A stretch of DNA of 63,378 nt, filler included, from Pelomyxa schiedti (taxonomy: Eukaryota > Protista > Evosea): the NCBI GenBank assembly GCA_020536535.1. It is 10 parts of 10 records of this genome, joined end to end, with 100 filler letters (N's around TTAATTAATTAA, not from the genome) between each part and the next. Parts side by side here need not be neighbours in the genome. Positions count along the whole stretch, not along the records: positions 1 to 10,779 come from JAHLWZ010001255.1; 9 more parts are not named here. One strand, written 5' to 3'. Shown one piece after another: positions 1 to 10,779 of the stretch (position 1 is the first letter of the stretch; each line of letters begins with the position of its first letter). The translations under genes and the position numbers were made by a program. Under the pieces are notes generated by a model. The model saw only the letters and a program-made list of their open reading frames with translations. It had not been told where the DNA came from and did no database searches.

Positions 1-470
1 AGCTATTCCATATGGTTCATTGAACATAGCGTCAGTACCATTGCCATCTAAATGCCCAGCAGTTCCACATCCAATTGTCATAACATCTCCTTTTGTTGAT
101 TTCAATTATTTGTAGTGAAATGCCCGTAGTAGGAAAGCGCCCATACTACAAACAATCAACAAAACAAAAACCGATTGCCAAACAGCATAGATTACATTCA
201 TACTAAAACGCATAAGAGTTGTGAACCTGAAACAGTGATCACCCTTACACTATTACTAGAGGTTGCGAAAATATTGCCATCCCAATCCAACGCAACACCA
301 CTAGGCGAGCAAAATTGCGCGGTATTGCACCTGCCATCCAAACGACCGCTAATACCCGTCCCCGCGACTGTGCTCACTACATCATCATAAGAAACGGTAC
401 GTGTTTGTTGGAGAGATCTGTCAAACAACGAACACACCCGTGTACTGGCCCCCTCGCATTCCTCGATCAA
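1..470 (-). CDS. NHL-repeat protein (3' truncated by the window edge; start uncertain)
   Basis: Two NHL-type repeats: VSTVAGTGISGRLDGRCNTAQFCSPSGVALDWDGNIF (ORF 198..470) and, after an intron, VMTIGCGTAGHLDGNGTDAMFNEPYGIA running off position 1. Confidence 0.8.
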
Positions 471-613
471 TCAAAATTGTATTTGATTCAACTATTAACT
501 CAATAAAGTGACTTGGGCCAGTAGATTTGACGTCTGGGCCAAGGGTCTGTCACGGTGCTCAGCTGAATGCTCCACAAAACAAGTCATCAAGGAAAGTAAA
601 TCCTGAGTTAGTA

Positions 614-2935
614 TTAGGGTTCAAGGCAACTTGTGGGTGAAGCTGGGGGAGAGGGATCTAGGTACCAGTCACCAGCTGTGGCTCCGGCTGTGTAAACGTG
701 GAAAGATACAGTGAACCGGAACAGTGATTTGAGTGGCGCCCTTGTGTGGGACTTGATTATGCTTGTTGACACATATGGAACCCACAGGGCATCGGTTGAT
801 GCCAGGGTGCGGAACTCCCGGCAAACCTAAATTTAGTTTGAGTTTTTGCTCTGAGCACTTGCTTGGTTTGCAGCGGTAATTGAATGCAAAAAGATGATCG
901 AAAGATATACGGCTGAAAGGCGAAAAAGAGATTTTCGGTCACAGTACGAAAAAATATTCATCCACAATTCATGAGGAAGCATGCCAAAAACGTTACTATA
1001 AAGCTGCAACCACCAGGCATCTCCCTGCATCTTTCCTTTGTATTCAATATTAATATTTTTTTGAACAGTAAATTTCTGAGTACCTGTGGGTAGTCCTGAA
1101 GGCGTCAATGCTCGGCCACCAGCCAGTATGAGGGAGCCAGTTCCGGAAGAAAGAAGAGTGTGGAATTCTCGTACTGGGGGTGAATTCGCAATATCAATGC
1201 GGGACCATTCGTATGAACCCAACGTGAGTCTAGTCAAATTAATGTGAAGGTTGAAAAGGGAGAGAGTACCATACCTCAGTAAAACCATAGACTTTGCTGT
1301 AGGTACACAAGAGCACACAAACATCTCGTCCCCAATGACAGCGGCTGAATGACCTCGCATAGGAGGCGGTGTGATACCTTTGGTCACTGGCTTGAGCCAT
1401 TCCATGCAGAGCAGATCTTGATTTAGGTGAGAGGTGACTTCTTAATAAAATTAGGGCTGTTATTACCAAAAACCCACAAATCGTTGAGGCTTTGACCACT
1501 TAATGTTCCGCCTGGTTGAAGTTGTACAGGTTTATTTTTTTTTCTTTCTGACTTAACTTACCAAATATAATCATGGTCTTATTGTGACAAATAGCGGTGT
1601 GACGAAATCTTGCACGCGGAGCTCGTATTGTAGGCTTAATTGGAACCTTAGTGAACATTGCTTTAATGATCAGTCGTATTAAAAAGGGGCAGACTGGCAT
1701 CCAACTGCGTTCAGCCAAGTCGTAACACGTCACATCCTCACATGCCATACCATTGGAACACCTTGCGTTTTTCAATATCACTGCATTAGGTAAAACTGGC
1801 TCAACTCACCCACCAAAGATAAATAAGCACTTGTCAAAAAAATCATTGATGCCCAATATTGGGGAGATGGGGACGCAGAGGCATTTCCTTCAGGAAGGAG
1901 GGACCACTCCCCAGTTGTTACATTAAGGCAACGCAAGGCATTTGTATAGCTGTTACTTTTTCCTGCGCGCTGCGTTGGTTGAGAAGCTATTGTAGGAATG
2001 AAGTAACCTCCAAAGAGGAATACTAAGTTGTCAGTAAACCTTAGATATTGGGTTTCCTGCTCTTCCAGTTGTGGCTACTTTGACGACATGTGCAAAAAGA
2101 TCTTGAATATGGTCATCAGTTAAGGCACTTATTTCAAGATATACTGAGGCGTAAACATTTCGTGCAACCTGAAGGATGTCACAGAATTCCTACGGTGATG
2201 AGTCTACCTCAGATGCGCTTTCATAAGAAATGGGCATAACCCCTCGTGATACAAGCTGCTGTAGGACAATAGGGTTTGACCTCAAATCCCGTTTTGTTCC
2301 CACCAGGATGAACGGCATATTTGGACAATGGTGAGAAATCTAACTTTCATTGGTACAGTGGAGGTGGTTCATCAGGTAACCCACCTCAGGGACCCACTTT
2401 TATTTGGAAAACGTTAAATAAAGTTTTTGTGGTGGTGTTACCTTTGACAAACATTTTCCAAAGAGGCATGGGAAATAAGCATACCTTACGTGTCACCACA
2501 AAACGAAAAAGATGGGCTCCACCAGGACAAGATCGGCGTGTGGGTAGCTCAGTGCCCTCTGCCTGTCATAGTACTCGACACCCCCGAGGATCATGAATTT
2601 CAAAGGAATAAAAGAGGGTACTAGCACCCGCAGTATCCCATAATACATTCGTTGTCCTGGTACACTACATTCATGCTTCATCACCAAATGGCAAGGAAAT
2701 AAGGAAAAACCTGTAATTATCAAACACCTTTGGTGACAATGTGCATGCACAAAAACAAAAAATGTGGGTAGTGATTACGGTTGGTGTGATTGCGGTCGGA
2801 AAAGCTCCAGAAGTGCACCGTAGAAGCAGGCACGTCTGAGAAACTACAATCAGAGGAATGACGAGAAGGAAAACCACGTGCTTTGCCAGCACCGTCCTAC
2901 GGGGACTATCTTCGGTTTGGCATGTTTTAACCTTT
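614..2935 (-). pseudogene. Rho-like GTPase + Kelch repeats + C-terminal F-box; frame-disrupted
   Basis: Rho motifs appear in order: KIVPVG/DGAGK, TCLLLRCTSGAFPTAITPT-VFDNY, LWDTAG, EYYDRQRALSYPHADLVL, SHASLENV, WVPE, YLEISALT. Kelch repeats follow (CLFIFGG, PRARFRHTAICHNKTMIIFG, PPPMRGHSAAVIGDEMFV, PPVREFHTL). Then an F-box: LPHELWMNIFSYCDRKSLFRLSA|VCREFRTLASTDALW, with stop at 614-616. Several junctions cannot be kept in frame with GT-AG introns, e.g. in the G1 box and the T7 run near 1836-1842. Confidence 0.65.
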
Positions 2936-3099
2936 CGAGAAAACGATCACTGATATTCTACAGTAGAAAACCAACAAGCGCATTTTTTACGAACAACATG
3001 AAGACTTCATCTTTATTTGTGACACTGGAGAATGGCGTCCGGCACTTTTGTGGTTTGAATGAATGTTCTCCACGTCCAAACAAGTTGGCCTCGTTCCCC

Positions 3100-3345
3100 T
3101 GTTACAATAATGCAATGTTCAACCTTGGTGTGTGTTCTGAAAATGCGGCGCTGTTCCAGAGGGCAGCTGATGCTGGTAACATCAGGACAATGTGCTGCCT
3201 TTGGGTGTGTTACTGTGCTGACAAGGACGTGAGCAAAGATATTACACTATTCCAGAGGTCTGATGCTAGTGTCACAAGGGCAATAATGTGCGACCTTGGG
3301 CGCTGTTACGAAAATGCAATGCTCAACCTTGGTCTGTTCGACTTT
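3100..3345 (+). pseudogene. Degenerate Sel1-like repeat fragment
   Basis: NAMFNLGVCSEN, LFQRAADAGNIRTMCCLWVCY and AIMCDLGRCYENAMLNLG resemble Sel1 repeats with internal deletions. No complete gene is evident. Confidence 0.5.
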
Positions 3346-3432
3346 GCAATATTACGTGGGACACCTTGTTACATGGGTACCCACCTCGTGTTCCCAATAA
3401 ATTCTAATGGGTTTTAGCACCTAAAAAGTGCA

Positions 3433-4955
3433 GTGAACACGATGATTCAAAGTGGGGCCTGTGGGGGTTTATTCCACGGCACGAACTGTGTGCTTCTACA
3501 ACTTTGTTTCACATTAATTTCACCATACAGGTTTAATAATCCTTGGGTACACCCGGGAAATGACTTGGTTCTGGGTCACAGGGTGCGTCAAGATGTCTCA
3601 TCTAAAATGATATTCAACGAGACAATGCAGAGAATGCTGACCATGTATTTGCAGCCGCCCTGGTGCGTCGGAACTGGCTTCGAAACTATTTTCGCCCGTG
3701 ATCGCCTCACTCTGGTTAAGGAAACTCTACAAAAACTGCGTGACGTAAAACAGAGACTCCACAAACAACCAGAATGTGCATCACCTTTTCAGGTTATTTT
3801 ATTTCCTAACAATATGTATTCAGCTGCCGTTTTGTCTTGGCGGCACAATAAAGCAAAGCCGTCGACTGGGTGAGCCAGCAACACAAAAACAATAGTTACT
3901 CACCCTGACAATAGGGAAGTGGCACAGCAAGCCCTGAAGAGCAGGCCACAAACCATTGGTCCTGGGACTCTCCAACAAAAGCTACAGGTTTTGTTTATTT
4001 TACACATTTGTAGCAAAAATAACAAATGTTTTTCGACAAACAGAACCTACAAGGAGTAAAGGAAAAAATTGTCAAGTTCCATCTGAATCTCCCTGATTTT
4101 GGTGGGAATTACACACCAGACTTCCCCAAATATCAGATCCAGACAGACTTGGAGGTGTCAATCAACAACATACCCCAATGTCACTGTCGCCCCAGAGGCA
4201 CACACACCATTATGATGGGGAGCCCTGGTGTTGGTAAGAGCACTTTGCTGAATTCAATTTTCTCACGTGACCTTGGCTCCCCTATGCCGTTTCCTTCGGG
4301 GCTTTCGTTTGGAACTGGTCTGACCACTACCTGTCACCAAAAGTTGGATAATGATGGGTTAATGCTCATTGATACACCAGGATTATCTGAAGCAAACCTG
4401 GAATCCATGATCAAATACATAAGCAGTCATGTGATTTCAGGAATATGCAAGCCGATCTTTGTTGTAGTTCCTGAGGCAGGCCGCATCCGAGCGGAAGACA
4501 AAGCAATGCTTAGCTCTGTGCTGCAGGCTGTTCCAATGATCAAAGGGAATTACTCTATCATCATCAACAGGACCCCTCCTGGAATGTTTGACAACATTCC
4601 AGGAGGAAAGGATTCATTCATAGCACAGCTGCAGGGGAGTTTACCTTCGTCATCAAGCGTTTATTTCTTACCGATCATCAACGCCTGGGAGGATGTGGAT
4701 AATGTAGATGCGTTCAATTTGCTTCCCGGCGACTTCATAGAGTTTATTAAGCGAGCTCCCGTGGTGGATTTCCCTCCAAGTACCTTGACTGAGGATTCAC
4801 CACCCACAGTTGGGGAATTAGTTGGACTCACATACAATAATACCATAGACCAGATGCGTGAATTGCAAGAAGAAGTCCAAGCGGCAAGGAGCTCCAGCAA
4901 CATCACTACCCCCGCACCGTTGACCACTGCCGTGCACTCTACATCCATTCCTTGA
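3433..4955 (+). CDS. TRAFAC-class (AIG1/septin-like G-domain) GTPase, cassette gene A1; 5' exons uncertain
   Basis: ORF 4026..4955 has G1 GSPGVGKSTLLN, G2 GLSFGTGLTT, G3 LIDTPG, G4-like IINR and a short coiled coil. Upstream coding exons at 3433-3990 are inferred. Confidence 0.8.
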
Positions 4956-5024
4956 CTCCTTACAGGGAAGCAAACCGACTGAAAAAAAATTTTTTTTAAT
5001 TGGATTGGAGGGGAAGGAGCGTTG

Positions 5025-6284
5025 ATGTCGGGTCCCCCGCCGCTTGGTTCCTACCCTCCCATTACCACGATCTTCATGGGTCCTTTGGGAGTGGGCAAGA
5101 GCGCTTTGCTGAACGCCATTGTCCGAGTTCCGCCGGGGTCGCCTTCGCCTTTCCGCTCCGGTAATTCGATCGGCCCCGGATTGACAACAAAGTGTGAGCA
5201 ATTTACTGATCTGATGGACGGCGACAGGTACATTGACACTCCAGCTCTTGGTGTCGAGAGGCACCAACAGCAGGCGGTACTGGAGGCACTCAACCAAGGA
5301 GGACTTTTCCGAGTAGTTTTTATTGTGGTGCCGAGGGCAGGGCGTGTGCAGCCTGGTGACGTCACAATGATGTCTCTTTTGCACCAGGCTGTTCCAACAA
5401 TTGGGTCCGGTTACCTGATTGTGATCAACAAAGCTTCGCCGGGAGTGATGAATGGAAGCATACCTAACAAAAGGGAGCTCCAAAGGAAGCTGCAGGAAGG
5501 ACTTCCACCCACTTCCAATTTTTACTACTTTCCTATTGTGGAAGCGTGGAGTTTGCCCAATTGTGACCACCGTGCTTTTGCTGGTTCAGCAGACTTCAGG
5601 AATTTTATTCAGCACGCTCCTGCTGCTGCAATTCCCCGCGGTTCCATTTCTTCCTTTCTTCCAGATGAGCAACAGTCCCTTATTCATGCATTTGAAAGTA
5701 CGTTATCGACTGAGCGGATGTTTCAGTCAATGAGGGAACTGTTTCAGGAACTGGAGGCAAAAATACAAAGAGAAAGAGCTGCAGCTCTAAAAAAAGAATA
5801 CAACTTGCAAATGGCACTGTTCTGTGCCACGGGGGACACTAAACATAGGCATGTTTCATTTTCATTATTATGAGTATTTTGTTGTCTCATTATTCACAGC
5901 CAAAGAGCTGATGAGGTGAAACAATTTGAGGAAGAGACCAAAAACAGGAACCAACGAATGGAAACCCTTAGGTGTGCAGTCACCACATCACTGGCAGTCT
6001 TTTAAAACATAACCCAAAGGACTTCACATGAATTGAATAAATCACACCATGTAATTGTTGTGAATCGTGGGGTGAATATGATATCCTGCCACCTCACAAA
6101 ATCCAGTGATTCCACAGGAGAAGACAGCTGGTTTAACATTCCAAAGGGAGGAACCCATGAATGGGCACGCAACGGGCCTGAGATGCTTACATACAGCTGG
6201 CAAGGTACTGCCAGACAGGAACGAACAGTTCACCCAGGAGACATCATGTATGCTCAGGACCAGGCTCTTTTTTCTTCCAGTTAA
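5025..6284 (+). CDS. TRAFAC-class GTPase, cassette gene B1, with coiled coil and a possible C-terminal Trp-containing beta domain
   Basis: G1 GPLGVGKSALLN, G2 GNSIGPGLTT, G3 YIDTPA, G4 VINK. Coiled-coil exon at 5900-5971. An acceptor at 6018-6019 joins it in frame to ORF 6033..6284, whereas the nearer acceptor (5997-5998) gives a stop at 6003-6005. Confidence 0.8.
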
Positions 6285-6300
6285 TGGGGAAAAACCGTAA

Positions 6301-7460
6301 AATAGTATTTATTATCCAATTTATGTGATACTGAGAGCATATGGCAGATCGCCACAATTAATTTATAACCACCACCCTGAAGTCAAATGGTGCCCAATTG
6401 GGTTTTCCCCAAATTGGGCACATTTTGGGCACCTCCACCTTGCTGCTTCCTTGTTCCAAATTGGAGATGTCCTGCTTTTGGGCTCCAATTTGGGGTGAAG
6501 AAAAATCACAAAGTTGATAGGTGTTTAGTAAGGTGGTTCCCAACAGCCAGAAATTCAGCAACGTGTGGACCATTGAAAAAACACTCAGTTGAGTTCCTCA
6601 CTTTTGTGTCTGTAGATTGCAGCAAGCCAGTGGTACCCTTCACCTTTCCCAGAAAAGTGAATTTCTGGGAGTACAAACAGTTGGCCAATTCCGGCCATAA
6701 CTGGATCATGGGTGGAGGGGCAAAGGCGTCAGTGTTTTCCCAAAGACCCAAGGGGCAAAGGTTTTTGCTGTCACTTTCCTCTGGAAACCCCTAGGGGTGA
6801 AGGTTTTTCCTCTCAAAAAGCCTCATGCCATGGGGTGAAATAAGGTAAAAAAAGGTAGTATTTGATAAAAAAACACTGTTAAACTTCTTTTTGCACAAAG
6901 TGTGCTAGTGACAACAAAGCAGCCACTTTGGAGCAACACTGAGGCCATAAAACAGGTTTTTCCCACAGTTGTCTTCCCATGAAGGGCCCAAAACATGGGA
7001 AAGCCCATGAAGCTCCCACAGCTTGCTCTTGGTAATGTGTCCACAAGGAGTTGTTGTGTACATTTTTGGACTACAAAAAAATAAAGTGAAAATTTAAGTT
7101 CTATTTGTGTTATGGTTCATACAAGAAGAAAGGGGTTACTGGATTCAGCCCAGCACTTCACAATACCTGCATCTGGTCTGCAGTTGTTAATAACAATGCC
7201 ATCTCTATAGCATGGGCATCACCTTGTGAAGATGTTATGCTTGAGAGTTTATTTATCCCCTTGACAGAAGACTGAGTAAGGTTGCCACATCAGAGGTTTG
7301 GCAAATTTGAGTTTCTTTTGTCAAGTCCACATGGGAAAAACAACACCATGGTATCCAGGAGTGTACACCATACACAAACACCTGAAACAGGAATAGACCC
7401 CAAGATGGACCTTTGTATTTGCTCCACTAATAGTCCCAGGTGACCTTCTTGACTACCCAG
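6301..7460. mobile_element. CpG-depleted, non-coding or decayed segment (putative repeat or transposon relic)
   Basis: About 4 CpG in 1160 bp counted by eye, against dozens in the next 400 bp. No intact ORF. Palindromic CCAA(A)TTGG motifs and a GTGCCCAATT...AATTGGGCAC inverted repeat near 6390-6422. No transposase homology was recognised. Confidence 0.3.
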
Positions 7461-7630
7461 CACGCACAAAAATTGCATTTCCTTGGTTGATGTTTTGCGT
7501 AGGGACTCTTGTGAAACTCTCCCTCCTCGCGCTGGGTACCGATCCGATCGAATCTGTTGATTGGCAGGTGTTTAAAAAGCAACGAAACCTAGAGCTTCCT
7601 TCGGCTTTTTTTGTAGTTTTTTTTCTCGGA

Positions 7631-9747
7631 ATGACAACCACAGCGCTGTGGCGTGATGCGATGCGACGCACCGAAGCCATCCTCGCACGCAACCCGGGCA
7701 TATACACCAATGCCCTTTTCTCGCAAGGTACTACGCCTACGACGCAGCCCCTAGGAGCCGACAGCGGCGCAGGTGCACCGCTGATGACGTCACCTCCGCC
7801 GCCTCACTCCTCGTTTCTTGTTTTTGGTCCTACCAGGGTGGGGAAGAGCACCCTGCTGAACCTTGCAACATCGGTTGAAAAGCGTTACGAAGTACCACGC
7901 CTCACCAAGTTGACATTAAAATACGAGGTTCGTTTCACCTTTTTTACACAAGACAAAACATCACCAAGCAAAACAACAAACAACAATCAAAAAGGTACCA
8001 AAGAAAGACCTCGTCTTTATCATTGGGCGAACCGGTGCTGGGAAGAGCTCGTATATCAGGTCTTTGTTAGGCCTGCCAGAGCTCTATATACAGGATGAAT
8101 ATACAATCGAGATAGATTCAGAAGATACCTGGTCCTGGGCGCCGACAGTGGAAACTCTAACACCAGATCCTTGTGATCTGTTGTGCACACTGGCTGATTC
8201 TCAATATTCTTATTGTCCCTGGGATCTTTGTGAGACATTGCTTCCTCATTCACGATGGACTGTCCCCTCTCAGACCTTACAAACCATAGTACAAATATGG
8301 AAACCAAACGGTGGGAGAATCAGAAGTACCTCAGCTACCTCTGGATATATGTATCTCCAAGGTTTCTATTCTATTCTCCTTCAGTCAGTTATGCTTACAA
8401 CATCAAGGAAAGGTGGACTTACTCCCCCAAATAGTCAAAGGACCTGTGGATACGTGCCATAACTTCAAAGCATGGTATCTTCTCCCTAGGTCAATGGAGG
8501 ATCTTGTGGTTTCACAGAGGCAGTCGAACATTACTTTACTTTCAGGTTCCTCAGTGTTCTGGGTTCTTAAACCCCATCACCTTCCAGCCCCTCCAAATGA
8601 AACGAATCTAGACCTGAAGCTAGAGAACATGACGAAAGAGATTGAAAAGATGCTGAAGCTGTGTGCCGAATCTATTTCCACTAGGATTCCGCGTGCCCTT
8701 GCCCCTACAAAACCGAAACTAAAACCATCCAGCGTTCGGTTATATTGGACTTCACCCATTACAAAATGGATATGGCATGAAGGCACCTACAAGCTTCCAA
8801 TATTTCACCATGCCGAAGGCAGCCGTACAACGACCTCAAAGTCCGACGCCTTTGATCCTTGTTACCAGCAGAAAATAAAGCCCCAGGAGCAGGGTGAAAA
8901 GCTAATGCCCAGGGAAATTGAATATACCCTAGCCCCAAAATCGGAAACCAGCAACTCATCCCAACGCAGTAATACCAGAAATACTCATACAATCGTGATT
9001 GGAAACCCTGGTGTTGGTAAGAGCACGTTATTGAATGCTATTTACCCCCGAGATCCTGGCTCTCCGGTTCCGTTCCGGTCGGGGCTTTCGTTTGGCTCCC
9101 CTTTGACTACCGGGTCCCTTAAAAAGTTGGATATATATGGGAACGGATTCATTGATACACCAGGAATCTCCAAAAAACACATGGAACAGGCCACTTCCGA
9201 GATAATCAGCACACTGAATACTGGAGGACTCTTCAAAGTGATCTTCGTGGTAACTCTTGAAGGAGGCCTTGTACGAATGGAAGACAAAGTTACTATTGGA
9301 TTCATGCTCATGGCTGCTCCCACGATTGGAGAGAATTACTCTATCATTGTAAATAGGACCACACCATCCCTGTTTGATAGCAATCCAGGAGGAAAAGCAT
9401 CGTTGATAGCAGAGCTGCAGGATGGCCTGCCTCAGTCATCGAGCGTTTTCTTCTTACCGTTCTTTGACGAGTGGGAGGATGTGGACAATGTTGATGCATC
9501 GAATCTAGTCCCAGACGATTTCAAAGAGTTTATTGAGCGAGCTCCTGTTGTTGCATTCTCCCCAGGTACAATTCCTAATCTTTCACCCACAGTCTGGACA
9601 ATATTGAGAAATGGTGCCCTCATGGCTTCCGGGAGGGACCAAATACGCAAATTGCAAGAAGAAGCTCAAGTCGCCCGGAGTCCCAACAACATCGTGGCTG
9701 CCTTCACGCCCAGAACTGGTGCCACGAGCTATCAATCAACCCCTTAA
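7631..9747 (+). CDS. Multi-P-loop TRAFAC-class GTPase, cassette gene A2
   Basis: Three Walker-A-like motifs: GPTRVGKSTLLN (~7825), GRTGAGKSSYI (~8025) and GNPGVGKSTLLN (~9000). The last is followed by GLSFGSPLTT, FIDTPG and IVNR, and the C-terminal ~250 aa is clearly paralogous to A1 (both share WEDVDNVDA...DF.EFI.RAPVV.F). Confidence 0.8.
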
Positions 9748-9831
9748 TGGCTTACGATAAAAAGAAATTAAGCCGACCAACGAAAAAAATTTTCATACGA
9801 TCGGACGTTCGACCAACAACGGAGAGCCTTT

Positions 9832-10779
9832 ATGGCCACCATCGCCTCTTGTCCCCCAATCAGTTCCTTCCCCAGAGTCACAACCGTTGTTTTTGGCAAC
9901 CAACAGGTGGGCAAGACCACGCTGATGTACTTGATGAGCGCACGTCCCCGCAGAAGACCAGAGCCACTGCTGGACGGATACGATCCTAACTACCAGACAG
10001 AATTTACTGATCGCGATAACCTCTTATACGTTGAAATAAGACAGCATTTCGAGGCTGTAGAAGGTGCACTCAGTCGTGAAGGGGCGTTGCGAGTTGTATT
10101 TATTGTGACGGTGCTGTCAGGGCGTGTGAGCGAGGACGGTCAGGACCTGTTGTCCTTTGTGCATCAAGCTGCTCCCATGATTGGGCCCAATTATTGCATA
10201 GTGATAAACAAGGTTTCACCGGGAGTGGTGAATGCAACCCAAGAACAAAAAAGCAGGATTGAAACTGAGTTGCAAAACGACTTTCCTTCCACTTCCAATG
10301 TCTACTACTTTCCCTACGTGAAAGAATGGACATCGCCCAACTGTGACCCCTGCACTTTTGCCGGCGTTCCAGAATTTAGGAGTTTTATTCAGCAGGCTCC
10401 TACTATTTGGATACAGCCTGGCTCCCTTAATTCACGCTTTTTAGCTTCGATTCGAGGAGCAAGGCGCCCTCTTGAGATTCGAATTTGGCACCTAGAGCGT
10501 CATCAATCAGCGACGGAACAGCTATACGAAGAATCTCAGGTCAGAGAAGGAGAACACTTAAAGATTATCTACGAGTCGCTCCTAGACCATTTCCGTACAA
10601 CTGGGCAGACTTGTGACAGGTTTAATGTAGTGCACCCCTCCTGGGACTCATTATTCACACAGAGAAAAGGCTGATAAAGCAAAAAAAGAACTGGATGACT
10701 TCGTCAATTCCCGCGATAGAGATTGCCTTAGGTGTGTTGGTACTTACACTTCTAATCGTTAAAGTACATTAGAAGAACT
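9832..10779 (+). CDS. Degenerate GTPase, cassette gene B2 (3' truncated at contig end)
   Basis: Paralog of B1 (RVVFIVTVLSGRV, VINKVSPGV, YYFPYVKEWTSPNCD) with the same 3' intron positions. G1 is GNQQVGKT and no DTPG G3 motif is visible. Confidence 0.75.

What the first reader, a model, noticed from the sequence alone, without database searches (positions are those of the whole stretch)
3433..10779. Tandemly duplicated two-gene cassette of TRAFAC-like GTPases (A1-B1 ... A2-B2)
Seen: four co-oriented GTPase genes forming two A+B pairs. A1/A2 and B1/B2 are each other's closest paralogs. A-to-B spacers are only ~70-85 bp and share CCGAC..GAAAAAAA-TTTT, and the B genes share 3' intron positions. 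N- and C-terminal extensions differ between copies, and B2 has lost G3. Known: clustered, fast-diverging GTPases (AIG1/GIMAP, IRG, GBP) act in cell-autonomous immunity, and some work as active/inactive pairs. Inference: an undescribed paired-GTPase module in an amoeba, possibly for defence or control of ingested or endosymbiotic microbes.
Basis: partly seen in the sequence, partly recalled or inferred. Interest (0 to 1): 0.75.

Follow-up and report, generated by a model that had tools for sequence, protein, structure and literature searches.

The report
Paired active/degenerate GTPase genes in Pelomyxa
An anaerobic amoeba (Pelomyxa schiedti) carries repeated two-gene units of GIMAP/AIG1-like GTPases, one gene with an intact catalytic site and one with a damaged site, a pattern that suggests the two proteins work as a pair, though what they do is untested.

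Summary
The four co-oriented GTPase genes are real. The window is a Pelomyxa schiedti contig. A1 and A2 are annotated only as hypothetical proteins (Pelo_17101, Pelo_17103).

A and B are two well-supported sister clades with congruent trees. Synonymous distances match (dS A1-A2 1.1, B1-B2 1.3), so an A-B unit was duplicated whole. The closest copies are not in the window. A third pair, A3-B3 on contig C113, is 72-75% identical to A1-B1 and lies in one 2.2 kb block (dS about 0.3). All copies are under purifying selection (dN/dS 0.35-0.55).

The family is neither amoeba-specific nor small. It has over 1,200 clusters at E below 1e-30, in many eukaryotes and in the amoeba symbiont Amoebophilus asiaticus. 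Members often sit in arrays or as 2-4 fused G domains. The nearest solved folds are GIMAP7, GIMAP2 and Toc34, roughly tied with Era.

New here is complementary decay. Every B has lost the G3 glycine, all of G3, or the P-loop lysine, yet keeps the arginine that aligns with GIMAP7's trans arginine finger. A proteins keep G1 and G3, but A2 and A3 have lost that arginine. Some fused relatives show the same split.

Best reading: an obligate A:B heterodimer in which B activates A. A defence role is speculation.

The parts
3115..4955 (+). A1 gene (public model Pelo_17101, 519 aa). Its last exon, 4041-4955, holds the G domain with intact G1, G2 and G3 (DTPG), a GRIR motif and G4 = NRT.
4956..5024 (.). 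A1-B1 spacer of 69 bp. It holds CCGAC..GAAAAAAAATTTTTTTT. A1 and B1 are in the same frame, and a second stop codon lies in the spacer beyond A1's own.
5025..5848 (+). B1 exon 1: a G domain with an intact P-loop, G3 = DTPA (glycine lost), GRVQ (arginine kept) and G4 = NKA.
5849..5899 (+). B1 intron 1 (GC-AG, 51 nt). It contains the in-frame TGA at 5871-5873. B2, B3 and B5 have an intron at the same site.
   Evidence: GC-AG introns make up 1.59% of introns in this genome
5900..5971 (+). B1 exon 2, encoding the conserved peptide ADEVKQFEEETKNRNQRMETL.
5972..6127 (+). B1 intron 2. The donor AG|GT is conserved in B1, B2 and B3. The acceptor is uncertain, because the public B3 model uses a nearer one. 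B5 lacks this stretch almost exactly.
6128..6284 (+). B1 exon 3 (..FNIPKGG..ALFSSS, then stop). It lies within the 2.2 kb block shared with contig C113.
7634..9747 (+). A2 gene (public model Pelo_17103, 667 aa). The upstream exons carry two extra P-loop-like motifs. The G domain is at 8965-9747, with intact G1 and G3 and the arginine finger replaced (GGLVR).
9748..9831 (.). A2-B2 spacer of 84 bp, with CCGACCAACGAAAAAAATTTTC.
9832..10619 (+). B2 exon 1: P-loop present (GNQQVGKT), switch I altered, G3 deleted, arginine kept (SGRVS), G4 = NKV.
10620..10662 (+). B2 intron 1 (GT-AG, 43 nt). Removing it puts the conserved C-terminal peptide in frame.
10663..10731 (+). B2 exon 2. The donor of intron 2 follows at 10732, and the contig ends at 10779, so the gene is cut off.

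Best explanation
The window holds two copies of a two-gene unit from Pelomyxa schiedti. A third copy lies on contig C113.

Shown:
- A and B are sister clades of one family of AIG1/GIMAP-like, dimerisation-type (TRAFAC) GTPases.
- The unit A-then-B was duplicated as a block at least twice.
- Both gene types stay under purifying selection.

Inferred:
- A and B form an obligate heterodimer across the nucleotide-binding faces, as GIMAP7 does with itself and with GIMAP2.
- A is the working GTPase.
- B is a pseudo-GTPase that may still bind nucleotide but hydrolyses poorly or not at all. It supplies the conserved arginine (A1 R153 equivalent) in trans to A's active site.
- Because B's own site is dead, A's arginine has no target and has decayed in A2 and A3.

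The cellular output is unknown. A role at membranes around ingested or resident microbes is possible but speculative.
For: Unit duplication:
- The trees are congruent: (A2,(A1,A3)) and (B2,(B1,B3..)), with support 96-99.
- Synonymous distances match: dS 0.32 and 0.30 for the young pair, 1.1 and 1.3 for the old pair.
- One continuous 2.2 kb block at 82% identity spans A, the spacer, B and the 3' flank.
- All 3 A genes have a B directly downstream.

Selection: dN/dS is 0.35-0.55, and the 95% bootstrap intervals lie below 1.

Fold:
- The A1 model has pLDDT 78.
- Best structural matches are GIMAP7 (Z 15.4), GIMAP2 (14.8) and Toc34 (14.3).

Arginine:
- The family motif TLEaGRvRpeD aligns to GIMAP7 VLQLGRYTEEE. 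A1 R153 therefore aligns with GIMAP7 R103 (after subtracting 5 tag residues).
- GIMAP7 activates itself and GIMAP2 through a catalytic arginine finger in the dimer (quoted in PMC8066113).

Complementary decay:
- In a 60-sequence alignment, the G3 glycine is kept in 55 sequences and R153 in 55.
- The sequences that lose the glycine are the four aligned B genes, plus one other sequence. A2 (L) and A3 (H) are two of the five that lose R153. All B copies keep R153.
- Fused relatives show the same split: P0010, and the group P0103/P0104/P0107/P0133.

Many family members have 2-4 G domains in one chain.
Against: - No interaction, expression or activity data exist.
- No multimer model could be run.
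- The single-chain model of the natural fused relative P0010 gave pTM 0.58, which does not show a defined domain-domain packing.
- A1 keeps its arginine, and B1 keeps its P-loop lysine, so the A1-B1 pair is less asymmetric.
- Other fused relatives (P0101, P0139, P0200) show a different pattern, in which the dead domain has also lost the arginine.
- The structural lead of GIMAP over Era and YsxC is about 1 Z unit, which is a tie.
- G-to-A in G3 is assumed to disable the site by analogy with Ras G60A, from my own knowledge. This was not tested.
Confidence: 0.5

Rival explanations
1. This is plain birth-and-death evolution of a tandem gene family. B is simply an older tandem duplicate of A that is slowly decaying. 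Adjacency reflects how the genes were copied, not a functional pairing.
For: - The family shows pseudogene-like copies: C804 is split across three frames, C1219 has its P-loop in another frame, and there is a B fragment on C113.
- B copies also occur without an A: B4, B5 and the fragment.
- dN/dS is fairly high at 0.35-0.55.
- All three pairs descend from a single ancestral pair, so they are not independent evidence.
Against: - B ORFs stay open in at least 5 copies across dS above 1.3, with dN/dS significantly below 1.
- All B copies keep the family's near-invariant arginine, D158 and N181 while losing G3.
- A-type loss of the arginine is the mirror image of this, and it recurs in independent fused proteins.
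Confidence: 0.25
2. A and B are one gene. A read-through transcript is spliced across the stop codons to give a two-G-domain protein like the fused relatives.
For: - A and B are in the same reading frame in all three pairs, and the spacers are only 69-114 bp.
- Fused proteins of 470-580 aa with two G domains are common in the family.
Against: - Two to four stops separate the ORFs, counting A's own stop codon.
- In A1-B1 and A3-B3, only weak GC donors could give an in-frame intron that removes those stops. No canonical GT-AG intron is shared by the three pairs.
- The public annotation calls B3 as a separate gene starting at its own ATG.
Confidence: 0.1
3. These are housekeeping Era/EngA/EngB-type ribosome-assembly GTPases, which is how automatic pipelines name some relatives.
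For: There are weak hits to the RsgA, Era, Der and YlqF models. Some metagenome relatives are auto-named EngB or Era.
Against: - All NCBIfam equivalog scores are far below their cut-offs, for example Era 25 against 237.
- No KH or other RNA-binding domain was found.
- The family is lineage-expanded, fast-evolving and partly degenerate.
- Fusion partners are U-box, LRR, lectins and kinase.
Confidence: 0.03

Closest known systems
GIMAP GTPases, especially GIMAP7 activating GIMAP2 (AIG1 domain, PF04548)
   Same: - They give the best structural matches: Z 15.4 and 14.8.
- The conserved box after G3, with its GR motif, aligns residue for residue with GIMAP7 G102-R103, the trans arginine finger.
- The precedent is an active member stimulating a poorly active member in a heterodimer.
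- Genes lie in clusters.
   Different: - Only A1 passes the Pfam AIG1 threshold, and over half the model.
- The P-loop is GNPGVGKST rather than the GxTGxGKS type.
- G4 is NK/NR without Asp.
- The partners here are hard-wired as adjacent genes with complementary motif loss.
Entamoeba histolytica AIG1 family (29 genes)
   Same: - It is an expanded, variable family of AIG1-type GTPases in another archamoeba.
- It occurs as tandem arrays of 2-3 genes whose members belong to different phylogenetic clusters.
- Only part of the GTP-binding motifs are conserved (PMC5884625).
   Different: - No Entamoeba protein appeared among the listed hits of three sequence or profile searches, so this is probably a different subfamily. 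A direct comparison was not run.
- No active/degenerate pairing or arginine-finger complementarity has been described there.
Toc33/34 and Toc159 chloroplast import GTPases
   Same: They have a similar fold (Toc34 Z 14.3). Both are GTPases that dimerise across the nucleotide site and have an arginine at the interface (my own knowledge).
   Different: There is no plastid here, no membrane anchor was detected, and there is no sequence-level membership.
Der/EngA (two G domains in one chain)
   Same: It has tandem G domains, as the fused relatives of this family do. It is the best sequence-level PDB hit.
   Different: - The two-domain model of P0010 does not superpose on Der (TM 0.2, rmsd 18 Å).
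- There is no KH-like domain.
- Equivalog scores are far below cut-off.
'GTP-binding protein HSR1-related' genes of Candidatus Amoebophilus asiaticus
   Same: They are members of the same profile family (E 5e-116). Three co-oriented genes lie in a row about 90 bp apart, and one has two G domains.
   Different: - They are bacterial.
- They have lipoprotein-like signal peptides.
- All G motifs and arginines are intact.
- A related contig adds a U-box.

Membership tests
MMR_HSR1 (PF01926, generic Era-like G domain) | Pfam score above the gathering threshold of 21.9 bits | tested here: met
   A1 33.8, A2 25.9 and B1 23.6 bits. B2 has no hit.
AIG1/GIMAP (PF04548) | Pfam score above the gathering threshold of 27 bits, over the whole domain | tested here: inconclusive
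   A1 scores 30.2 bits but covers only profile positions 4-109 of 212. A2 scores 15.6, B1 15.1 and B2 nothing. Many relatives carry the precomputed AIG1 hit.
AIG1/GIMAP (PF04548) | Conserved box between G3 and G4 containing the LGR arginine | tested here: met
   The profile-to-GIMAP7 alignment puts the family motif TLEaGRvRpeD on VLQLGRYTEEE. R153 is present in 55 of 60 aligned family members.
AIG1/GIMAP (PF04548) | Closest solved fold is GIMAP or Toc rather than another TRAFAC group | tested here: inconclusive
   GIMAP7 Z 15.4, GIMAP2 14.8 and Toc34 14.3, against Era 14.0 and YsxC 14.0. These are within about 1 Z unit of each other.
AIG1/GIMAP (PF04548) | Nucleotide-dependent dimerisation with trans activation | not testable with these tools
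   No multimer prediction or biochemistry was available. The single-chain model of the fused relative gave pTM 0.58.
Canonical TRAFAC GTPase | G4 motif NKxD with the specificity aspartate | tested here: not met
   The family has N181 invariant, followed by K (46 of 60) or R (the A clade). The position where the Asp would be holds S, T or P.
Era / Der / EngB / RsgA ribosome-assembly GTPases | NCBIfam equivalog score above cut-off | tested here: not met
   The best score is 31 bits against cut-offs of 100-380.
Septin (PF00735) | Pfam score above the gathering threshold of 26.2 bits | tested here: not met
   13.2 bits, over the P-loop only.
IRG / GBP interferon-type GTPases | Sequence or fold closest to IRG or GBP | tested here: not met
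   There was no Pfam hit. GBP1 scores Z 12.7 at rank 50, and Irgb10 appears only as a weak Foldseek match.

The most novel reading that the evidence does not exclude
A widespread but undescribed two-component GTPase switch. A catalytically dead G protein is kept solely to deliver an arginine finger to an active partner. The two are encoded as adjacent genes or as fused domains. Amoebae would use it in cell-autonomous handling of ingested or resident microbes. Intracellular bacteria such as Amoebophilus would have copied the family, adding secretion signals and U-box domains, to interfere with it.
Probability: 0.15. Interest if true: 0.8.

Novelty: new variant of a known kind. Interest (0 to 1): 0.5.

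Why it matters
GIMAP/AIG1-type GTPases are linked to immunity in animals and plants and to virulence in Entamoeba, yet their mechanism outside vertebrates is largely unknown.

Here the gene order and the pattern of motif loss together make a concrete, testable prediction: B activates A in trans through one named arginine. This concerns a family with thousands of uncharacterised members in protists, algae, fungi and oomycetes. Homologues also occur in an obligate amoeba symbiont.

If the prediction holds, it gives a genetic signature for finding obligate GTPase heterodimers from sequence alone: a degenerate G3 with the arginine kept, next to an intact G3 with the arginine lost. It would also offer an entry point to how an amoeba full of endosymbionts manages them.

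If it fails, this locus is an ordinary fast-evolving tandem family.

Tried and rejected
- The word-based protein search with B1 found nothing, not even itself. The likely reason is that the nearest public model, B3 at 497 aa, falls just outside the length window, and B1 may not be in the collection as that ORF.
- Exact look-ups of A1, B1 and B2 products gave no contigs, so no transcript evidence could be reached.
- PADLOC gave only P-loop-level noise.
- The Amoebophilus genome is not in the searchable genome collection.
- I tested whether an arginine-less relative (P0054) has a B-like neighbour. The neighbour does have DTPA in G3, but it is only a truncated fragment, so this counts as anecdote, not support.
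- The Der-like arrangement of the fused relative was rejected.
- I considered a bacterial operon origin for the tight A-B spacing, because the G-domain exons are intronless in a genome with 7.4 introns per gene. The B genes have spliceosomal introns, and the nearest relatives include eukaryotic transcripts, so this remains only an idea about origin.
- The resemblance of the spacer motif to the Entamoeba initiator element is from memory and was not tested.
Exons were read and compared by reference only, and the dN/dS values use single exons.
Full report
**What is there**

The piece 1-10779 is contig C1255 of a 52.4 Mb, 5,337-contig assembly. A search with A1 returns 'hypothetical protein Pelo_17101 [Pelomyxa schiedti]' at 100% identity. 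The assembly size and scaffold count match the published P. schiedti genome (PMC8887013).

Four co-oriented ORFs carry a P-loop G domain:
- A1 4026-4955
- B1 5022-5873 (ATG at 5025)
- A2 8311-9747
- B2 9832-10674

Pfam gives only generic hits. MMR_HSR1 is above threshold for A1, A2 and B1. AIG1 is just above threshold for A1 and covers only half the model. B2 has no hit. Against a profile of the family itself, all four score E from 1e-52 to 1e-70.

**Gene models**

- A1 is the last exon of a public 519-aa model whose upstream exons start near 3115.
- A2 is the C-terminal part of a public 667-aa model, Pelo_17103. It starts at 7634, and its N-terminal exons contain two further P-loop-like motifs. 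These N-terminal pieces have no paralogs or only weak ones.
- The B genes start directly at the G domain and have 3' introns.
- Intron 1 sits at the same codon phase in B1, B2, B3 and B5.
  - In B1 it is GC-AG (5849-5899) and contains an in-frame TGA.
  - In B2 it is GT-AG (10620-10662, 43 nt). It must be removed to bring the conserved C-terminal peptide into frame.
  - The public model of B3 (Pelo_1352) is spliced exactly at this GC-AG site.
  - GC-AG introns make up 1.59% of introns in this genome.
- A second intron follows a conserved CTTAG|GT donor. B5 lacks it almost exactly. B2 is cut there by the contig end.
Exons were handled by reference.

**History of the pairs**

The genome holds about 12 loci of the family:
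- three A genes
- five B genes plus one B fragment
- four more distant copies, two of which look broken

Every A has a B directly downstream on the same strand, with spacers of 69, 84 and 114 bp.

The third pair lies on contig C113, with A3 72% identical to A1 and B3 75% identical to B1. Window 4164-6302 aligns to C113 as one continuous 2.2 kb block at 82% identity. The block covers A, the spacer, B and the 3' flank.

In a maximum-likelihood tree with 39 outside relatives:
- A forms a clade (A2,(A1,A3)) with support 98.
- B forms a clade (B2,(B1,B3,B4,B5)) with support 96.

Synonymous distances agree between partners:
- A1-A3 0.32 and B1-B3 0.30
- A1-A2 1.1 and B1-B2 1.3

So an ancestral A-B unit was copied whole at least twice. 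The two pairs in the window are the older split, not each other's nearest relatives. Extra B-only copies arose later. One of them, B4, is fused to a protein kinase domain.

dN/dS is 0.35-0.55, with 95% bootstrap intervals below 1 for all four comparisons. Both gene types are therefore constrained, though loosely.

**The spacer**

CCGAC..GAAAAAAATTTT occurs only in the two spacers of the window (2 matches against 0.11 expected). It is rearranged in A3-B3, where the spacer has diverged more than the flanking coding sequence.

A and B share one reading frame in all three pairs. However, 2-4 stops lie between them, counting A's own stop. No canonical GT-AG intron shared by the three pairs could remove those stops. 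A1-B1 and A3-B3 have only weak GC donors.

I read the locus as two genes with a very short intergenic region. Whether they share a transcript cannot be decided without RNA data, which I could not reach.

**What family**

A profile of the four window genes, four paralogs and 52 relatives finds 6,574 cluster representatives at E up to 0.001 and 1,201 at E up to 1e-30.

Named members come from:
- diatoms, oomycetes, red algae, a mucoromycete fungus, and MMETSP and EukProt transcriptomes
- the obligate amoeba symbiont Candidatus Amoebophilus asiaticus, where three co-oriented genes with lipoprotein-like signal peptides sit in a row

A syntenic metagenome contig adds a U-box to one of them. Other fusion partners in the family include Jacalin and ricin-type lectins, LRR, VWA, Sel1 and DnaJ.

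Many members contain 2-4 G domains in one chain, and arrays of 3-5 genes are common.

The A1 model (pLDDT 78 overall, above 90 over most of the G domain) is closest to:
- GIMAP7 (Z 15.4, 203 residues)
- GIMAP2 (14.8)
- Toc34 (14.3)
- Era and YsxC (both 14.0)

This places the family in the Era/septin-like part of the TRAFAC class, with a slight lean towards AIG1/GIMAP/Toc. Ribosome-assembly equivalog models are far below threshold.

In Entamoeba, the described AIG1 family also sits in tandem arrays of 2-3 genes from different clusters, with incomplete GTP-binding motifs (PMC5884625). No Entamoeba protein appeared among the hits that my searches listed. I did not compare the two directly.

**The new point: complementary decay**

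The family has a near-invariant motif after G3, TLEaGRvRpeD.

In the profile alignment to GIMAP7, the GR falls on G102-R103. Chain numbering is offset by five tag residues, which the L100Q position confirms. [quoted passage not shown] That R103 is this finger is from my own knowledge of the GIMAP7 structure paper.

Among 60 aligned members, the G3 glycine is kept in 55 and this arginine in 55. The Pelomyxa genes are prominent among the exceptions:
- B genes:
  - B1, B4 and B5 have DTPA.
  - B3 has DAPA and also a P-loop Lys-to-Thr change.
  - B2 has lost G3 altogether.
  - The B fragment also has DTPA.
  - All B copies keep the arginine.
- A genes:
  - A1, A2 and A3 keep G1, G2 and G3.
  - A2 has Leu and A3 has His in place of the arginine.
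  - On the tree this is most simply two independent losses.

In a symmetric GIMAP-like dimer, each subunit's arginine reaches into the partner's site. If B's site is dead, A's arginine has nothing to do and can decay, while B's arginine is still needed. The observed pattern is what an obligate A:B heterodimer predicts.

The same split appears in natural fused proteins:
- P0010 has an N domain without G2 and G3 but with GR, and a C domain that is intact but lacks the arginine.
- P0103, P0104, P0107 and P0133 have a first domain that is intact but lacks the arginine, and a second domain with a dead P-loop that keeps the arginine.

Other fused proteins follow a different pattern, in which the dead domain lacks the arginine too (P0101, P0139, P0200). 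The rule is therefore not universal.

**Limits**

- I could not run a multimer prediction.
- A single-chain model of P0010 gave pTM 0.58, which neither shows nor excludes fixed packing. It does not resemble Der.
- No expression, interaction or activity data were available.
- The defence or symbiont-control idea rests only on circumstantial points:
  - a GIMAP-like fold
  - a fast-evolving, expanding and decaying family
  - lectin, LRR, U-box and kinase fusions
  - homologues in an amoeba symbiont
  - the fact that P. schiedti lives with prokaryotic endosymbionts (PMC10579272, abstract)

**Verdict**

The locus is best described as a hard-wired pair of an active and a degenerate AIG1/GIMAP-like GTPase. 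It is a new variant of a known kind, with a specific mechanism that can be tested.

Noticed in passing
L001:4073-6229 (-), = G000:C113: A B-type G domain (DTPA in G3, arginine kept) is fused in one 719-aa ORF to a protein kinase domain (PF00069, 86 bits).
   Followed up: partly
window 7634-8361 (+): The N-terminal exons of A2 (public model Pelo_17103) carry two extra P-loop-like motifs, FGPTRVGKST and IGRTGAGKSS, with nothing resembling the rest of a G domain. These exons have no paralogs or only weak ones in the genome.
   Followed up: partly
window 4953-5025, 9745-9832; L001 8396-8513 (-): A and B ORFs are in the same reading frame in all three pairs, separated by 2-4 stop codons (counting A's own). 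This may be chance, or a trace of a former fusion.
   Followed up: partly
L002:5285-5530 (+), = G000:C113 near 19.3 kb: B5 lacks the second 3' intron of the B genes almost exactly. The deletion is bounded by a GGT microhomology.
   Followed up: partly
G000:C804:129774-130607 (-) and G000:C1219:875-1677 (-): Two further family copies look broken. C804 is split over three frames with a stop. In C1219 the P-loop lies in a different frame, within a 1,395-codon open frame.
   Followed up: no
L011:6001-10107 (Ca. Amoebophilus asiaticus, CP001102) and L009:8001-11971: An amoeba endosymbiont has three co-oriented family genes about 90 bp apart, each with a lipoprotein-like signal peptide. A syntenic metagenome contig has one copy fused to a U-box.
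   Followed up: partly
L013:6001-7795: In an unidentified GC-rich eukaryote, an arginine-less family gene with intact G3 is followed 533 bp downstream by a co-oriented fragment with DTPA in G3. The fragment covers only the first 83 profile positions.
   Followed up: yes
window 198-1781 (-): Exon-like ORFs of an F-box/Kelch protein (F-box 25.6 bits) and a weak NHL repeat lie on the opposite strand upstream of A1.
   Followed up: partly
window 4026-4955, 5025-5848, 8965-9747, 9832-10619: The G-domain coding stretches of about 280-300 codons have no introns, in a genome reported to average 7.4 introns per gene.
   Followed up: no
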